Sequence record: PQ741806.1
Strand: one strand, 5' to 3'
DNA: 64,000 nucleotides
Part shown: positions 9,455-23,498 of the stretch, piece after piece
How positions within the stretch are numbered: position 1 is the stretch's first letter
Layout of the letters: the number at the start of each line of letters is the position of its first letter
Made by a program: the position numbers and the translations under genes
Notes under the pieces: generated by a model
What the model saw: the letters and a program-made list of their open reading frames with translations, nothing else
What the model was told of the DNA's origin: nothing
Databases searched by the model: none

Positions 9455-9787
9455 TTAAACGAATAATAATTCCAGTACTAATACTGGAAATTTATGCCGA
9501 TATTGTGGATGTACATACGTATGAAATTTATGTGTACCTAAATGGAATTCAACGTATAGTACAATAAAATCTTTAGCTGCATTTCGATCATGTACGTAAA
9601 TAGTGAGTATTTCACCATCATCATCTTTCTTACGTCCATAATCAAAATAGTAATTTTTATTATCAGCTATCCCTTCAGCATTTAATTGAATGCCTCTTAC
9701 ATCGACAACATTTAAACTAGAATCTTCATCAAATAAAGATCTAGTGCTGCCATGGTAAACCATTAATGGATCTAATTGAATCTGCAT
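9455..9787 (-). CDS. Hypothetical protein (110 aa)
   Basis: GAGGA RBS. Confidence 0.8.
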   Translation of the reverse strand: MQIQLDPLMVYHGSTRSLFDEDSSLNVVDVRGIQLNAEGIADNKNYYFDYGRKKDDDGEILTIYVHDRNAAKDFIVLYVEFHLGTHKFHTYVHPQYRHKFPVLVLELLFV

Positions 9788-9807
9788 GTGTCAGTCCTCT
9801 ACTATGT

Positions 9808-9827
9808 AGTGAGGCACATGCCTCACT
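9808..9827. terminator. Hairpin AGTGAGGC-ACAT-GCCTCACT
   Basis: 8-bp intergenic stem. Confidence 0.65.
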
Positions 9828-9855
9828 TATATTGTTTTAATTTTCATATTAATGA

Positions 9856-16554: not shown

Positions 16555-17157
16555 TCATTGTGTATAATAATTCTTTTTGAGATTATCCATATCGTAAGAA
16601 TCATGTTTGAACTCAAACTTCTTAGCTATCTCACTCGAAAAAGCTTGTTTACGTTTTTCTTCTTGTTCACGGATATCGTAAGGACCATTCTCTTTAACAA
16701 GATATTTTTTATACGGCCCAGTTCCTTGGATATATCCATCAGGAATAATGGTTGTGAGATATTTAGCCTCTACCAACCGGATGCACCGTCCATAACCAAC
16801 TTCATTGGCATGACGAACTTGGATTAGTTGTCTATTCTTGGCAATACGTTCAGATATGCATGGGAAGTAAACCGGATCATCTCCTTTTTTACAGTTACCC
16901 ATATCAACCTTTGCGTACAGAATTTTTCTATGATTGGCTTCGAAGAAAGCCCGAGCTTCACGAATACGTTGGGACCGAATAGCTTCCTTAGTTCTGACAT
17001 TCTTTAGATGTGCAGGTTGTAAAAAAGGATTCATCTTTCGCACGTGACGTTGGATAAGTTTTGTCGTGTAATGAGGTGAATCATTAGCCATAGCCAGTAG
17101 GCTATTGTACATCTCAATCGACATGATTACTTGCTGCGGGTCATTATTGCGCTGCAT
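16555..17157 (-). CDS. Hypothetical basic protein (200 aa)
   Basis: GGAG RBS, long ORF. Confidence 0.8.
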   Translation of the reverse strand: MQRNNDPQQVIMSIEMYNSLLAMANDSPHYTTKLIQRHVRKMNPFLQPAHLKNVRTKEAIRSQRIREARAFFEANHRKILYAKVDMGNCKKGDDPVYFPCISERIAKNRQLIQVRHANEVGYGRCIRLVEAKYLTTIIPDGYIQGTGPYKKYLVKENGPYDIREQEEKRKQAFSSEIAKKFEFKHDSYDMDNLKKNYYTQ

Positions 17158-19832: not shown

Positions 19833-20036
19833 TTTCTTTATTTCCTGTATTAGATTAATATAAATGTTTTATAACAACTATTTCAATATTGAATAACGTA
19901 TTATTGGTTGTTTTAATTTACTACTCAACCTGATAATGTGTAATACGTCTATCTATATATCTCTTTTCTCTGGTGAAGAGCATTAGCATTATTCCAAGGT
20001 AGAGTCCTTATTCTATTAAACATATAAGTAAATAAT

Positions 20037-20058
20037 CCCTCCCCAATAAAGGGGAGGG
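20037..20058. terminator. Hairpin CCCTCCCC-AATAAA-GGGGAGGG
   Basis: 8-bp stem. Confidence 0.8.
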
Positions 20059-20074
20059 TATATGTTATCTTAAT

Positions 20075-20492: not shown

Positions 20493-20669
20493 TTAATTAT
20501 TAAAAGATAAATCATAATCACTTTGTCTGCGATTCGGATTAACAGGATCAGGATATTTTCCAGTTTTGATAACTTCTTTTATAGCTCTAAAATCACGTTC
20601 TAGAAAATCTAGTTTTTTAACTAACTCTTTTTCTAATTCTTTATTGAGTAGTCTTCTTAATTTGCTCAT
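20493..20669 (-). CDS. Small hypothetical protein (58 aa), missed by track
   Basis: MSKLRRLLNKELEKELVKKLDFLERDFRAIKEVIKTGKYPDPVNPNRRQSDYDLSFNN*; fills gap, start inside upstream gene's 3' end. Confidence 0.7.
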   Translation of the reverse strand: MSKLRRLLNKELEKELVKKLDFLERDFRAIKEVIKTGKYPDPVNPNRRQSDYDLSFNN

Positions 20670-21036
20670 CTACGTATACTCTTACAATGAACCAATTGAT
20701 TAGGCCAAAACCTTTTGGTGTGATGGTAATGTCATCTTTATATCCATTTTTAGTGATTACATTACGTAATACTTTAATTGCTTCAGGTGGAATAAGATTA
20801 GCATTACCGGTAACACTATACTCGAAATAATAACCTACACCTGGTAAATAACCTGATGCAATCTGGTTAGTACCTGTGATATTACTAACGTGTTGGAAGT
20901 CACTAAAAGCATTCTTGTAGAATAACAAAATATTAGGAATTACTTCATCCCTAATAGTAGAACTAGTAATGGCATCCGCCGATGGAAAATAAGGTACTAA
21001 TTCATCTGTTACATTGGTGCTATTAATATCGGACAT
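20641..21036 (-). CDS. Hypothetical protein (131 aa)
   Basis: GAGGA RBS, first gene after early promoter. Confidence 0.8.
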   Translation of the reverse strand: MSDINSTNVTDELVPYFPSADAITSSTIRDEVIPNILLFYKNAFSDFQHVSNITGTNQIASGYLPGVGYYFEYSVTGNANLIPPEAIKVLRNVITKNGYKDDITITPKGFGLINWFIVRVYVDEQIKKTTQ

Positions 21037-21082
21037 AATCTTTTCCTCATTATAAAAGGATAAATATCTTTATGGTAATCCT

Positions 21083-21105
21083 GTAATATAGATTTAAATT
21101 AATTT
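21083..21105 (-). promoter_or_regulatory. phiKZ-type early promoter
   Basis: Minus AATTTAAATC-TATATTAC (core 21083-21090). Confidence 0.8.
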
Positions 21106-21118
21106 ATAATGAATGGCA

Positions 21119-21145
21119 TAAAGGAGCCCCTGGTGGGCTCCTTTA
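21119..21145. terminator. Hairpin TAAAGGAGCCC-CTGGT-GGGCTCCTTTA
   Basis: 11-bp stem; no protein gene ends here. Confidence 0.8.
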
Positions 21146-21310
21146 ATGTAATAGGTCCGACCCCTATCTAGAGGTCGGTGAGTAGCAAGGCACCGTAGTT
21201 GGGGTTCGTGTCGTTCCTGACGATACTTTAGTACCCCGGTTTATTTACGACTGGATCACCCCCTTAAAGTGCAGTGCGTTTTACGCAAACTGCCTTGCTC
21301 TATATCATTG
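21146..21310 (-). ncRNA. Candidate structured ncRNA with 16S rRNA 3'-end-complementary segment
   Basis: ORF-free and GC-rich. 9-bp closing helix 21184-21192/21291-21299 with inner stems; hairpin 21157-21178; 21246-21266 complementary to 16S 3' tail; terminator downstream. Strand and ends inferred. Confidence 0.55.
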
Positions 21311-21386
21311 CACTGTGCGTATTTTTATTCGTTAGCTAATCTTATGACTTAGAGTTATATTTACATACCCCTTAAGGAAAAATGCA

Positions 21387-23498
21387 ATGATAGACTCATT
21401 TAGGAAGCTAATGGGCTCGCTATCAATTACTGAAACTGATCAAGAAATTATCATCAGTGGTTTTGATGGTGCTGCATTCATTAGAGATATTAACAAGTAT
21501 TGGCGAACCACTAAATTAGCTACGCAGTTATTTAACACGGTTAGTCGTCGTAGTATTTCATTTTATAAATTCTTTGCTCCTGAAATATATTACATGCTAG
21601 AAGCAGTAAAGAATTATAGAAGTAGATACATCTCTATTAAAACTGTTAATGCCATCCGTGAAGCAATGCTTCAATATACCTGGTTAAAAAATACTCGTCC
21701 TGTAGATACCAACTCTGTACCAGGTAGACTCAATTTCAAGATGTTAGACAAATTGACATTTACACCAGATGAGTCTCAAAAAGCTTATTTTGAAAATTAT
21801 AATTATCGAATTGACCAGTATGGTTTACGTGGTGATATTGTTGCAGGTAAACCTGGTACTGGTAAGACATTCATGACGATGGCTATTGCTGAAATGGTTG
21901 AGTCGGATATCATTATAGTTGTTTGTGAAAAGAAGTCTATTGATCTAATATGGAAGCCATCTATTATTGAGATGTATAAGGAAAGACAAAAAGTATGGTC
22001 GACCATTGATGATAAAGCCTACAACGGTCAAAGAATACTTATATCCCATTACCAGGCGCAAGATAAAATAATTGATCTATTAAGAAGCGGTATATTCAAA
22101 GGTAAGAACATTACGGTGATTCTGGATGAATCACACAATATGAACGATCCTAATTCTGCACAATCTCTTAAGTTCCAGCAAATATGTTTTATGTCTAACT
22201 CTAATAACAGATTATTAGCGTCAGGTACCCCTGTTAAAGCACTTGGTTCTGAATTAGTAAGTGCATTAAGAGTATTAGACGATCTCTTCACCAATGAGGT
22301 TGAAGAACGTTTTAAGAAAGCATTTGGAAAAGAGACACAGAAAGGATTAGATATTGTCCAACATCGCTTTGGGTTAATTGCGTACGTCATTGAAAAGAAA
22401 GATACTGAGGTTTTACCACCGAGGATAAAAGCGTATCGTATCAAGATACCAAATGGATCACAGTATACTCTTAATGCCATTAAACGTGATTGTGAAGCTT
22501 TTATTAGAGAACGTGTAAAGTTCTATGCTGCGCGCCGACCAGAAGATGAGAAGTATTGGGCTAAACTAATGGCGATACACGAGAACTCTCTTAAGACCCA
22601 GGCGCAGAAAGATGGTTTCGCTCGCTATAAGAATTTGATTAAAATAATTCAGAAGAATCAAGACCCGCGATACATTGGTGAAGAAATTAAAGAATCTAAC
22701 CAATATGAAAAAATGTTTATAGAGCCAACTTTACCTCGTAATGAAATAGCTGCTTTTAGAGATATTAAATCAGTTATAAAATACGTTATGCTAAAGATAC
22801 AAGGTGAATGTTTGGGAAGGGTTTTAGGTGCTAAACGCATTCAGTGCCATGTGGACATGGTACCGTATATTGACTGGGTTGGTATCACTGAATCAACTAT
22901 GAAGAAAACGATTGCATTTACATCGTTTGTTGAGGTTGTTGATACTGTTGATAAGTACACCAATAAATTAGGTATGCATCCGGCGGTGGTGTATGGTAAA
23001 ACCAATGACAATTTACCTCAAATAATCAGTAGATTTGAGAAAGACCCTAAATTAAATCCATTGGTAGCTACATATGCTTCCCTTTCAACAGCGGTCCGTA
23101 TGACGATGGCTGATACTATGGTGACAATTAATTCACCGTTTAGGCATTACATTCTAGAACAAGCTATTGCTCGAATTTACCGTAAAGGTCAGGATTCACA
23201 AACAGTCGTATATCAATGTACTCTCGATACAGAAGATGAACCGAATATCTCAACAAGGTCAGATGACATTCTAAAATGGAGTCAGGCAATGGTTGAAGCT
23301 ATTATGGGTATTAAATCTCCATTTGAGATCACAGAGTCATTAGAAAGTTATGTTGATAAAAATAATAATTTTGATGAAAATAAAATCATTTATCAGATGC
23401 TAAAAGAATCATTTGAGAAGTATGATATCGCAATTGATTTTAATGACTTTGATACACGTATGTATAAACCATATCAGCCCGCATATATGCGGTTTTAA
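21387..23498 (+). CDS. SF2 (SNF2/DEAD-like) helicase, 703 aa; virion-associated in phiKZ-like phages
   Basis: GKPGTGKT, ILDESH, SGTP, QAIARIYRKGQ motifs. Confidence 0.92.
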   Translation: MIDSFRKLMGSLSITETDQEIIISGFDGAAFIRDINKYWRTTKLATQLFNTVSRRSISFYKFFAPEIYYMLEAVKNYRSRYISIKTVNAIREAMLQYTWLKNTRPVDTNSVPGRLNFKMLDKLTFTPDESQKAYFENYNYRIDQYGLRGDIVAGKPGTGKTFMTMAIAEMVESDIIIVVCEKKSIDLIWKPSIIEMYKERQKVWSTIDDKAYNGQRILISHYQAQDKIIDLLRSGIFKGKNITVILDESHNMNDPNSAQSLKFQQICFMSNSNNRLLASGTPVKALGSELVSALRVLDDLFTNEVEERFKKAFGKETQKGLDIVQHRFGLIAYVIEKKDTEVLPPRIKAYRIKIPNGSQYTLNAIKRDCEAFIRERVKFYAARRPEDEKYWAKLMAIHENSLKTQAQKDGFARYKNLIKIIQKNQDPRYIGEEIKESNQYEKMFIEPTLPRNEIAAFRDIKSVIKYVMLKIQGECLGRVLGAKRIQCHVDMVPYIDWVGITESTMKKTIAFTSFVEVVDTVDKYTNKLGMHPAVVYGKTNDNLPQIISRFEKDPKLNPLVATYASLSTAVRMTMADTMVTINSPFRHYILEQAIARIYRKGQDSQTVVYQCTLDTEDEPNISTRSDDILKWSQAMVEAIMGIKSPFEITESLESYVDKNNNFDENKIIYQMLKESFEKYDIAIDFNDFDTRMYKPYQPAYMRF

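What the first reader, a model, noticed from the sequence alone, without database searches (positions are those of the whole stretch)
21246..21266. 21-nt segment antisense to the 3' end of host 16S rRNA inside an ORF-free structured element: candidate ribosome-binding phage ncRNA
Seen: plus 21251-21266 CTGGATCACCCCCTTA differs by one base from the conserved bacterial 16S terminus CTGGATCACCTCCTTA. Read on the minus strand, 5'-UAAGGGGGUGAUCCAGUCGUA-3' can pair without a gap with 5'-UGCGGCUGGAUCACCUCCUUA-3' (Pseudomonas-type 16S end, recalled). All three differences in that span are G:U wobbles on the minus strand only, which points to the minus strand and to selection on RNA:RNA pairing. No start codon follows at normal spacing, so it is not an ordinary Shine-Dalgarno. 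Established: this span covers the whole single-stranded anti-SD tail and reaches into the 3' strand of helix 45. Rough estimate: a 15/16 match to a pre-specified 16-mer is expected about 1e-3 times in both strands of 64 kb under a uniform model, but I noticed it post hoc. Inference: the RNA could sequester or hibernate 30S subunits, block 16S 3' maturation, or bias translation towards phage mRNAs. Alternatively a plus-strand RNA could act as a 16S-tail mimic. I do not know of a description of such a system.
Basis: partly seen in the sequence, partly recalled or inferred. Interest (0 to 1): 0.92.

Follow-up and report, generated by a model that had tools for sequence, protein, structure and literature searches.

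The report
Phage RNA pairing with 16S tail
Phage phiKZ and its Pseudomonas jumbo-phage relatives carry an unannotated gene for a folded RNA of about 150-190 bases whose most conserved stretch is a 14-21-base complement of the free 3' tail of the host's 16S ribosomal RNA, so the phage probably makes an RNA that latches onto ribosomes.

Summary
The window is phiKZ. Plus 21251-21266 differs by one base from the Pseudomonas 16S 3' end. The minus-strand RNA pairs with that end over 21 gapless base pairs, three of them G:U. It is by far the strongest 16S-tail partner in the 64 kb.

The segment lies in a free-standing, ORF-free RNA gene on the minus strand (21301 to 21153 or 21113). The gene has a phiKZ middle-type promoter box and a phiKZ-type terminator. 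Published nanopore data show a 3' end at 21153.

Eighteen homologues in two subfamilies, all in Pseudomonas nucleus-forming jumbo phages, keep the same fold: closing stem, hairpin, junction strand, a domain capped by a GNRA loop, terminator. Twelve of 23 modelled pairs show compensatory changes. All keep AGG(G/A)GGUGAUCCA in the junction strand, giving 14-21 contiguous pairs with the 16S tail.

No start codon or conserved ORF follows. No Rfam family and no paper I could search describes it.

Binding to ribosomes, and any effect of it, is inferred and not shown. Pairing into helix 45 is not conserved. The closest known case is the rreB/rreR class of small mRNAs with 16-17-nt Shine-Dalgarno sequences.

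The parts
21300..21329 (-). Promoter-like box on the minus strand: A-rich stretch, TAC (21321-21319), 14 nt, TATAG (21304-21300). Predicted start at 21301/21300.
   Evidence: TAC-N10-AT-NN-TATAG is invariant in 9 relatives. The layout AAAAATAC-N18/19-start resembles the phiKZ 'middle' promoters P082, P098, P116 and P124 listed in the ONT-cappable-seq supplement. The closing stem P1 begins right after it and covaries. No TSS was called here in that study.
21113..21301 (-). Predicted primary transcript of the non-coding RNA gene (189 nt), from promoter box to terminator.
   Evidence: Homologues measure 155-189 nt between the same landmarks. Covariance model R1 finds exactly one hit in the window.
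21153..21301 (-). Likely mature RNA (149 nt), ending 4 nt after hairpin P4.
   Evidence: ONT-cappable-seq site T095 is an accumulation of 3' ends at phiKZ 213001(+), which is window 21153 on the minus strand (method).
21291..21301 (-). P1, 5' strand (RNA nt 1-11, AGAGCAAGGCA).
   Evidence: Pairs with 21181-21192. Unpaired probability is near 0 in all 12 homologues folded. Compensatory changes occur in inner and outer pairs (L273/L280).
21181..21192 (-). P1, 3' strand (RNA nt 110-121).
   Evidence: As for the P1 5' strand.
21271..21290 (-). P2 hairpin (RNA nt 12-31).
   Evidence: 92.9% of cells are paired. In the main subfamily changes are one-sided (C-G to U:G), and they are two-sided in the Noxifer-like subfamily, where the hairpin sequence is entirely different.
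21246..21266 (-). The finding: junction strand J2/3 complementary to the last 21 nt of 16S rRNA (RNA nt 36-56). The family-invariant core AGG(G/A)GGUGAUCCA is 21252-21264.
   Evidence: The 13-nt core is the only invariant block shared by both subfamilies.
21193..21249 (-). P3 domain: base stem, then P3a (21233-21237 with 21201-21205), then hairpin P3b (21208-21226). P3b is capped by a GNRA tetraloop in most relatives and by CAGGA in phiKZ.
   Evidence: P3a has 3 of 5 pairs with double changes and P3b has 7 of 7. The loops GAGA, GUGA, GGGA and GCGA are read from the alignments.
21157..21178 (-). P4 hairpin (RNA nt 124-145), the 3'-terminal hairpin of the mature form.
   Evidence: Stems differ between relatives but stay paired. 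The 8-bp phiKZ stem has a U:G pair on this strand that would be C:A on the other (sequence). P4 is absent from the Noxifer-like subfamily.
21113..21144 (-). Terminator: hairpin 21120-21144 followed by UUUAUGCCAU.
   Evidence: It fits the phiKZ terminator consensus (stem-loop followed by YTTATKYYGT) of PMC10914365 with one mismatch, and fits exactly in most relatives. The stem covaries. Many relatives have a UUCG or UACG loop on this strand.

Best explanation
Window 21301->21113 on the minus strand is a free-standing gene for a structured non-coding RNA. The phage's own RNA polymerase transcribes it from a phiKZ middle-type promoter. Transcription ends at a phiKZ-type terminator, and the RNA is found with a 3' end at 21153. 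The RNA folds into a closing stem (P1), a hairpin (P2) and a larger domain (P3). The strand joining P2 and P3 carries AGG(G/A)GGUGAUCCA. This strand base-pairs with the single-stranded 3' tail of host 16S rRNA, the anti-Shine-Dalgarno region, far more strongly than any mRNA can. The RNA would therefore dock on the platform of 30S subunits or 70S ribosomes. Docked there, it would occupy the site that mRNAs use for initiation, much as the protein RMF blocks it. It would also leave the 16S 3' end in a duplex, blunt in phiKZ, which could shield it from 3' exonucleases. Shown: the gene, its strand, its fold, its conservation and the complementarity. Inferred: that the RNA binds ribosomes. Speculative: which consequence matters to the phage.
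For: Gene and strand: there is a conserved promoter box and a phiKZ-type terminator on the minus strand. A published 3' end, T095, maps to window 21153 on the minus strand. The helicase TSS P107 maps to 21346(+), downstream of the element, so the element is not the helicase leader. GNRA loops in P3b and UNCG loops in the terminator appear only on this strand. G:U cells outnumber A:C cells 19 to 8. The Noxifer-like subfamily has invariant U:G pairs.

Fold: 93.7% of cells are paired, 12 of 23 pairs have changes on both sides, 0 of 500 shuffles reach this, and slid controls reach at most 43%. The second subfamily has the same architecture with a different P2 sequence.

Independence from neighbours: the flanking genes and their orientations differ between relatives.

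Target: all 18 homologues give 14-21 contiguous pairs with the Pseudomonas 16S tail. The core is invariant except for one G/A position, and both bases pair with the same U. It is the best site in 64 kb by a wide margin. Predicted net binding after opening the RNA is -15 to -22 kcal/mol in all 18, against a median of -5.7 and a best of -11.0 for phage ribosome-binding sites. The invariant block is flush with the 16S 3' end, the part of 16S usually taken to be unpaired (my own knowledge).

Precedent: rreB mRNA, with a 17-nt SD, co-sediments with 30S.
Against: No experiment shows that this RNA binds ribosomes. No TSS was called for it in ONT-cappable-seq or dRNA-seq, and it is absent from the published lists of phiKZ ncRNA candidates. 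It may therefore be rare, or its 5' end may be processed. The Grad-seq screen looked for phage RNAs that do NOT travel with ribosomes, so it would have missed this one by design. In predicted ensembles the motif is only partly open: mean unpaired probability is 0.29-0.57 and the opening cost is 3.6-9.1 kcal/mol. In phiKZ the G-run can pair with the C-run of P3a. phiKZ genes themselves use Shine-Dalgarno sites, so blocking the anti-SD would also cost the phage. All known hosts share one 16S tail, so co-variation between phage and host cannot be tested. P. aeruginosa 16S was not fetched directly.
Confidence: 0.6

Rival explanations
1. The RNA does bind 30S through the motif, but only for its own benefit, as a 'STAB-SD'-like element that protects or localises the RNA. 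Its real function would lie in the P3 and P4 domains, for example binding a phage or host protein.
For: P3b carries a conserved GNRA-capped hairpin and J3/1 holds a conserved UAACUACG stretch. P4 loops share an AUCUA-like motif. Non-translational SD elements that stabilise RNAs are known in Bacillus (my own knowledge).
Against: The 13-nt motif is the only block invariant across both subfamilies, while P3 and P4 vary in sequence and P4 can be absent. A stabiliser would not need 14-21 bp.
Confidence: 0.15
2. The motif binds something other than 16S, such as a protein or a phage or host mRNA carrying an anti-SD-like sequence. On this view the 16S complementarity is a by-product.
For: Purine-rich GGA/GGG stretches are common protein-binding motifs, as for RsmA/CsrA (my own knowledge). 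There is no direct evidence for 16S pairing.
Against: GGA is absent from the motif in 13 of 18 homologues, which have GGGGG. No second copy of the complement exists in the 64-kb window. Conservation runs flush to the 16S 3' end, and the single variable position keeps pairing with it.
Confidence: 0.12
3. It is a very small mRNA of the rreB type, and the long SD drives or throttles translation of a tiny unannotated ORF.
For: rreB/rreR mRNAs have 16-17-nt SDs, are about 165 nt long and bind 30S.
Against: No AUG, GUG or UUG lies 4-12 nt after the SD core in phiKZ. Stops follow at once. The region after the motif differs by indels and shows no shared frame in the alignments of 14 and 4 homologues.
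Confidence: 0.05
4. The plus strand is the functional one: an RNA that mimics the 16S 3' end (tail plus a helix-45-like stem) and acts as a decoy for a factor that binds or cuts that end.
For: The plus strand reads like the 16S tail. In some relatives it also reads like the stretch before helix 45: CAAGGC.CCGTAG against 16S CAAGGTAGCCGTAG. A few helix positions are G:U on the plus strand (8 A:C cells).
Against: No plus-strand TSS lies upstream, and the only plus-strand TSS (21346) lies beyond the element. The promoter box, terminator, GNRA and UNCG loops and most G:U pairs are on the minus strand. The extra 16S-like stretch is not above chance across the family (p 0.004-0.74, mostly >0.1). It is lost by compensatory change in L273 and L280.
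Confidence: 0.04
5. It is a DNA-level or cis-regulatory element of the neighbouring helicase gene, or a chance or relic fragment of host rDNA.
For: It sits next to the SNF2/DarB-like helicase gene in most relatives.
Against: Its side and orientation relative to the helicase vary. RNA-type compensatory changes are frequent. A relic would not stay invariant across genera.
Confidence: 0.03

Closest known systems
rreB / rreR small mRNAs of alpha-proteobacteria with extended Shine-Dalgarno sequences (Hahn et al., RNA Biol 2017, PMC5711450)
   Same: A short RNA of about 165 nt with 16-17 nt of complementarity to the 16S 3' end. The long SD makes the RNA co-sediment with 30S and suppresses translation instead of promoting it.
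   Different: rreB and rreR encode a 14-18-aa peptide that starts just after the SD, and they are bacterial. The phage RNA has no start codon or conserved frame, has a conserved multi-helix fold, and is viral. I did not look for sequence relatedness.
STAB-SD-type stabilisers (SD-like sequences in 5' leaders that bind 30S without starting translation; Bacillus cryIIIA; my own knowledge)
   Same: An SD-like sequence used for ribosome binding and not for initiation.
   Different: Those are short elements in mRNA leaders that act in cis. Here the element is the conserved core of a free-standing RNA and is 14-21 nt long.
Ribosome-associated non-coding RNAs, e.g. the archaeal Val-tRNA fragment that binds 30S and blocks initiation (PMC8938821, PMC11009984; seen)
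   Same: A small non-coding RNA proposed to act by binding the small subunit directly.
   Different: Those bind at or near the decoding site and are processed from cellular RNAs. This one is a dedicated phage gene aimed at the anti-SD tail by Watson-Crick pairing.
RMF and related hibernation factors; phage-encoded ribosomal protein bS21 (my own knowledge)
   Same: They act at the platform and anti-SD region of 30S and so control access of mRNA SD sequences.
   Different: They are proteins. The likeness is in the proposed mode of action only.
Published phiKZ-group ncRNA candidates: 5'UTR_p40, 3'UTR_PHIKZ298 and the gp182-upstream sRNA (201phi2-1 sRNA005)
   Same: Small RNAs of nucleus-forming Pseudomonas jumbo phages. 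The gp182 sRNA is also conserved across genera.
   Different: They lie at different loci, derive from UTRs, and have no reported rRNA complementarity. This locus appears in those data only as the orphan 3' end T095.

Membership tests
Ordinary Shine-Dalgarno site of a protein-coding gene | A start codon (AUG/GUG/UUG) about 4-12 nt downstream of the SD core | tested here: not met
   The sequence after GGGGG is UGAUCCAGUCGUAAAUAAACC, with no start codon at that spacing and stops close by.
Ordinary Shine-Dalgarno site of a protein-coding gene | A downstream ORF conserved among relatives | tested here: not met
   There is no ORF of >=30 aa in 21037-21386. The region after the motif differs by indels and shares no frame in the alignments.
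rreB/rreR-type small mRNA with extended SD | At least 16 nt of complementarity to the 16S 3' end | tested here: met
   phiKZ has 21 contiguous pairs, and the family ranges from 14 to 21.
rreB/rreR-type small mRNA with extended SD | A small ORF (14-18 aa) starting just after the SD | tested here: not met
rreB/rreR-type small mRNA with extended SD | Co-sedimentation with 30S subunits | not testable with these tools
   This needs gradient data. The Grad-seq supplements held here have no entry for this locus.
Any described RNA family (Rfam 15), tRNA or tmRNA | A match to a covariance model, or an ARAGORN call | tested here: not met
   There is no Rfam match in the element even at E<=10, none at gathering score in the whole window, and no tRNA or tmRNA.
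Structured non-coding RNA gene | A conserved secondary structure supported by compensatory changes | tested here: met
   12 of 23 pairs have changes on both sides, 93.7% of cells are paired, and 0 of 500 shuffles reach this. In the second subfamily 13 of 47 pairs have compensatory changes.
phiKZ-type transcription unit | The phiKZ intrinsic-terminator motif (GC hairpin followed by YTTATKYYGT) | tested here: met
   The minus strand has the hairpin 21120-21144 followed by TTTATGCCAT. This is one mismatch from the consensus, and most relatives match exactly.
phiKZ-type transcription unit | A phage promoter with a mapped TSS | tested here: inconclusive
   The box resembles the listed middle promoters and is conserved, but no TSS is listed at phiKZ ~212853(+).
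phiKZ-type transcription unit | An observed transcript end on the stated strand | tested here: met
   T095 at phiKZ 213001(+) is window 21153 on the minus strand, from the published supplement.
16S rRNA fragment or plus-strand 16S mimic | Collinear similarity to 16S beyond the tail, conserved in the family | tested here: not met
   Duplex with the 39 nt upstream of the tail gives p from 0.004 to 0.74 and is not significant in most relatives. The CAAGGC block changes by compensatory mutation in L273 and L280.
Hfq-type trans-acting sRNA | A Rho-independent terminator with a U-tail | tested here: not met
   The scan found no U-tract terminator. The tail is UUUAUGCC.
Ribosome-associated ncRNA | Physical association with ribosomes | not testable with these tools
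   There is only a prediction: a net -15 to -22 kcal/mol against the 14-nt tail.

The most novel reading that the evidence does not exclude
Nucleus-forming Pseudomonas jumbo phages encode a dedicated RNA that base-pairs with the 3' tail of host 16S rRNA over 14-21 bp. By this pairing they would take direct hold of the ribosome's mRNA-docking site, to reprogramme initiation, park 30S subunits, or shield the 16S 3' end from nucleases during infection. This would be the first phage regulatory RNA whose target is ribosomal RNA itself. In some relatives a second contact is possible, between the P4 loop and the 16S loop at 780-788 on the same face of the subunit.
Probability: 0.45. Interest if true: 0.9.

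Novelty: new variant of a known kind. Interest (0 to 1): 0.78.

Why it matters
phiKZ is the model nucleus-forming jumbo phage. How it takes over translation is an open question, and so far only proteins such as gp014 are known to touch the ribosome. A conserved, unannotated RNA gene aimed at the anti-Shine-Dalgarno tail would add an RNA-based route of ribosome capture. It can be checked at once in existing RNA-seq, nanopore and gradient datasets. It would also explain an orphan 3' end in the published transcript map, and it gives a new RNA family for phage genome annotation. The case further shows that screens for phage ncRNAs based on 'not sedimenting with ribosomes' would miss this class by design.

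Tried and rejected
- Rfam at E<=10 over the locus and at gathering score over the window gave nothing in the element. ARAGORN found nothing.
- The sigma-70 promoter and U-tract terminator scan gave only chance-level hits. phiKZ does not use host polymerase, so this is expected.
- Plus-strand reading as a 16S mimic: rejected on promoter, terminator, loop types, G:U counts and the mapped TSS.
- Extended antisense pairing to the 16S stretch before helix 45: strong in PS119XW (p 0.004) and marginal in phiKZ (p 0.07), but not above chance in most relatives. I dropped it as a family feature.
- A second contact between the P4 loop and 16S 780-788: a perfect 9-10 nt complement in Phabio, L273 and L280 and partial in PS119XW and Viktualia, but absent in phiKZ, PhiPA3 and L011. 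The unbiased scan was not significant. I kept it only as a note.
- Small-ORF reading: no start codon and no shared frame.
- RsmA/CsrA-sponge idea: GGA is not conserved in the motif or the loops.
- Looser DNA patterns in IMG/VR gave mostly noise, and a fixed-spacing pattern was too strict. Of 20 metagenome pattern hits, 17 were GC-rich chance matches.
- Covariance model R1 did not reach the Noxifer-like subfamily. Those four were found by their linkage to the helicase gene plus the motif.
- Supplements of the 201phi2-1 study, the journal version of the phiKZ nanopore study and the dRNA-seq study are not held. I therefore could not check whether one of the three intergenic sRNAs of 201phi2-1 is this RNA.
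- P. aeruginosa 16S could not be fetched from the plasmid collection.

Full report
Where this is. The window is Pseudomonas phage phiKZ read as the reverse complement of NC_004629, so window x equals phiKZ 234154 - x. It is 100% identical over 1.4 kb to phiKZ and to about 45 near-identical isolates. The finding lies in the 350-nt gap 21037-21386. On one side is PHIKZ204 (window minus strand, 20641-21036) and on the other the SNF2-type helicase PHIKZ203 (plus strand, 21387-23498). Nothing is annotated in the gap in any record. The gap has no ORF of >=30 aa and contains a GC island of 47-51% against about 30% around it.

The observation. Plus 21251-21266 is CTGGATCACCCCCTTA. I took the 16S end from tools: E. 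coli rrsH and 13 Pseudomonas-group genomes. All 13 end ...AACAAGGTAGCCGTAGGGGAACCTGCGGCTGGATCACCTCCTTA, and Rfam's SSU model ends at that same base. The match is 15/16 and unique in the window, and 0 of 100 shuffles give one. The minus-strand RNA 5'-UAAGGGGGUGAUCCAGUCGUA-3' pairs without a gap with the last 21 nt of 16S, with three G:U pairs. It is the best partner of the tail in the whole window on either strand, at -21.1 against -16.4 kcal/mol for 13 nt and -38.0 against -23.9 for 21 nt. That is about twice the strongest real ribosome-binding site, which scores -11.0 against a median of -5.7 over 56 ORFs.

Relatives.
- blastn shows that the stretch around the finding is the best-conserved part of the gap. 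It recurs in intergenic gaps of Pawinskivirus (PS119XW, PA1C), Miltoncavirus (PhiPA3), Phabiovirus, Serwervirus (201phi2-1) and Viktualia.
- Pattern scans added metagenomic copies: L011 and L013 and L134, L138 and L139.
- Loci fetched through the helicase protein added L273 and L280, and a more distant Noxifer-like group, L274-L277.
- This gives 18 sequences in two subfamilies, all from Pseudomonas nucleus-forming jumbo phages or their metagenomic kin.
- The flanking genes and their orientation differ between relatives, although the helicase is usually nearby. The element is therefore a module of its own.

Strand and transcription unit. Several independent lines point to the window minus strand.
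- (i) Each copy ends with a GC hairpin followed by (T)TTATGCC(A/G)T. This is the signature of phiKZ intrinsic terminators reported from nanopore data.
- (ii) Each copy of the main subfamily is preceded by an A-rich stretch, TAC, 14 nt and TATAG. This resembles the phiKZ 'middle' promoters listed in that study's table, which have AAA(A/T)TAC about 18-21 nt before the start. The Noxifer-like copies have a TATG-type box instead.
- (iii) That study lists T095, an accumulation of 3' ends at phiKZ 213001(+). This is window 21153 on the minus strand, 4 nt after hairpin P4. T095 is not assigned to any transcription unit (method).
- (iv) The helicase's late promoter TSS (P107) maps to window 21346(+), beyond the element. 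The element is therefore not the helicase leader, and no plus-strand start lies upstream of it.
- (v) Hairpin P3b is capped by GNRA tetraloops (GAGA, GUGA, GGGA, GCGA) in most homologues, and many terminator loops are UUCG or UACG. Both hold only on this strand.
- (vi) In the model-based alignment G:U cells outnumber A:C cells 19 to 8, and the Noxifer-like group has invariant U:G pairs.

No TSS was called for the RNA, so the start at 21301/21300 is a prediction. It is supported by stem P1 beginning exactly there in every homologue.

Fold.
- From the predicted start, P1 (21291-21301 with 21181-21192) closes a junction.
- P2 (21271-21290) follows directly.
- Then comes the junction strand that carries the finding (21246-21266).
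- Next is the P3 domain (21193-21249), with stem P3a and hairpin P3b.
- After P1 closes come hairpin P4 (21157-21178) and the terminator (21113-21144).
- On 14 sequences aligned to model R1, 93.7% of cells pair and 12 of 23 pairs have changes on both sides. None of 500 shuffles reaches this, and slid controls pair at 25-43%.
- L273 and L280 change the inner P1 pairs in a compensatory way.
- The four Noxifer-like RNAs (155-166 nt) have the same order of elements, with an unrelated P2 sequence and no P4.
- Model R1 gives a single hit in the window.

The motif.
- Across all 18 RNAs the only invariant block is AGG(G/A)GGUGAUCCA. The variable base is G in 13 and A in 5, and both pair with the same 16S U.
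- Contiguous pairing with the 16S tail is 14-21 bp, runs from the last, second-last or third-last base of 16S, and always covers the block from the third-last to the fifteenth-last base. That is the part of 16S usually taken to be single-stranded (my own knowledge).
- Pairing further into the 3' strand of helix 45 occurs in phiKZ but is not conserved.
- Predicted cost of opening the motif is 3.6-9.1 kcal/mol and the net gain is -15 to -22 kcal/mol in every homologue. In predicted ensembles the motif is about 30-57% unpaired.

What it is not.
- It matches no Rfam family, and it is not a tRNA or tmRNA.
- It is not an ordinary ribosome-binding site or an rreB-like small mRNA. No start codon follows, and the alignments share no frame after the motif.
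- It is not a 16S fragment. Similarity to the stretch before helix 45 is strong in PS119XW but at chance level in most relatives, and it is lost through compensatory change in L273 and L280.
- A possible second contact between the P4 loop and 16S 780-788 is a perfect 9-10 nt match in Phabio, L273 and L280. It is missing in phiKZ and not significant in an unbiased scan.

Mechanism. The best reading is a phage RNA that docks on 30S or 70S by forming an unusually long SD:anti-SD-type helix.
- Occupying the tail would compete with all mRNAs that use SD sites, phage mRNAs included. Dose and timing would therefore matter, and a middle-type promoter would fit action after early genes are expressed.
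- In phiKZ the duplex reaches the last base of 16S. That could also shield the 3' end from 3'-to-5' exonucleases. This is inference.
- Rivals are listed separately with their weights: ribosome binding only to stabilise or place the RNA, another binding partner, a hidden tiny ORF, a plus-strand mimic, or a DNA-level element.
- None of the rivals accounts as well for a 13-nt block that is invariant, flush with the 16S 3' end, and presented in a junction strand of a covarying fold.

Literature. Searches of the held library found no description of this RNA or of any phage RNA aimed at 16S.
- The phiKZ dRNA-seq study predicted one 75-nt sRNA that could not be confirmed.
- Grad-seq reported two candidates at other loci. 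It searched specifically for RNAs that do not migrate with ribosomes.
- The nanopore study lists 17 UTR-derived candidates, none of them here.
- The 201phi2-1 study reports three intergenic sRNAs whose coordinates I could not read.
- The closest known case is rreB/rreR.

Limits and a slip. All functional statements are inference from sequence. P. aeruginosa 16S itself was not retrieved. E-values from model R1 are rough, and its alignment leans towards the given structure. Twice in my reasoning I wrote short pieces of 16S rRNA from memory, the 3' tail and a stretch near position 790, before fetching them. I stopped each time. Every sequence used in an analysis or quoted here comes from tool output.

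Noticed in passing
L005:1369-1549 (Phabio), L273:9305-9493, L280:8470-8655, L006:1367-1550; 16S = L204:1408-2944: The loop of hairpin P4 reads UAUCUAAUC(U) in Phabio, L273 and L280, and UCUAAUCU in PS119XW. It is a perfect 8-10 nt complement of Pseudomonas 16S nt 780-788 (GAUUAGAUA). phiKZ, PhiPA3, L011 and the 201phi2-1 clade do not keep it, and the unbiased scan was not significant.
   Followed up: partly
window 21083-21098, minus strand: A TCTATATTAC box with an A/T-rich upstream stretch lies between the RNA's terminator and PHIKZ204. It looks like the listed phiKZ early promoters. Phabio and L134 have the same box at the same place. No TSS is listed there in the nanopore table.
   Followed up: partly
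window 20031-20063: A bidirectional terminator lies between PHIKZ205 and PHIKZ206 (T096/T097 at phiKZ 214091(-)/214123(+)). The same CCCTCCCC...GGGGAGGG hairpin produced the weak 'PyrG leader' Rfam hit, which is a false lead.
   Followed up: yes
window 21346 (+): The late promoter P107 TSS for PHIKZ203-202 lies only 41 nt before the helicase start codon. Its 50-nt upstream region overlaps the promoter box of the minus-strand RNA gene, so the two divergent promoters are back to back.
   Followed up: partly
L003, L004, L005, L006, L007, L272-L282: The RNA gene stays within about 1.5 kb of the SNF2/DarB-like helicase gene in every relative where the helicase could be placed. It can be upstream and co-oriented (PhiPA3), divergent (phiKZ, PS119XW, Noxifer-like) or separated by small ORFs (Phabio, Viktualia, 201phi2-1). 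The reason for the linkage is unknown.
   Followed up: no
window 16872-16887 (+): CCGGATCATCTCCTTT, with three mismatches to the 16S end, is the only other site within three mismatches of the 16S end. I did not check its coding context, and it is at chance level.
   Followed up: yes
window 21153-21157 and 21145-21156, minus strand: The published 3' end (21153) falls in an A/U-rich linker before the canonical terminator hairpin. This suggests processing of a 189-nt primary transcript to a 149-nt form, or termination at P4. Which of the two applies is not resolved.
   Followed up: no
L274-L277 (about 9685-9852, minus strand of each locus): The Noxifer-like subfamily of the RNA is 155-166 nt long, has a TATG-type promoter box, a canonical GGAGG, a P2 with a GACA loop, and no P4. 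Model R1 does not detect it.
   Followed up: partly
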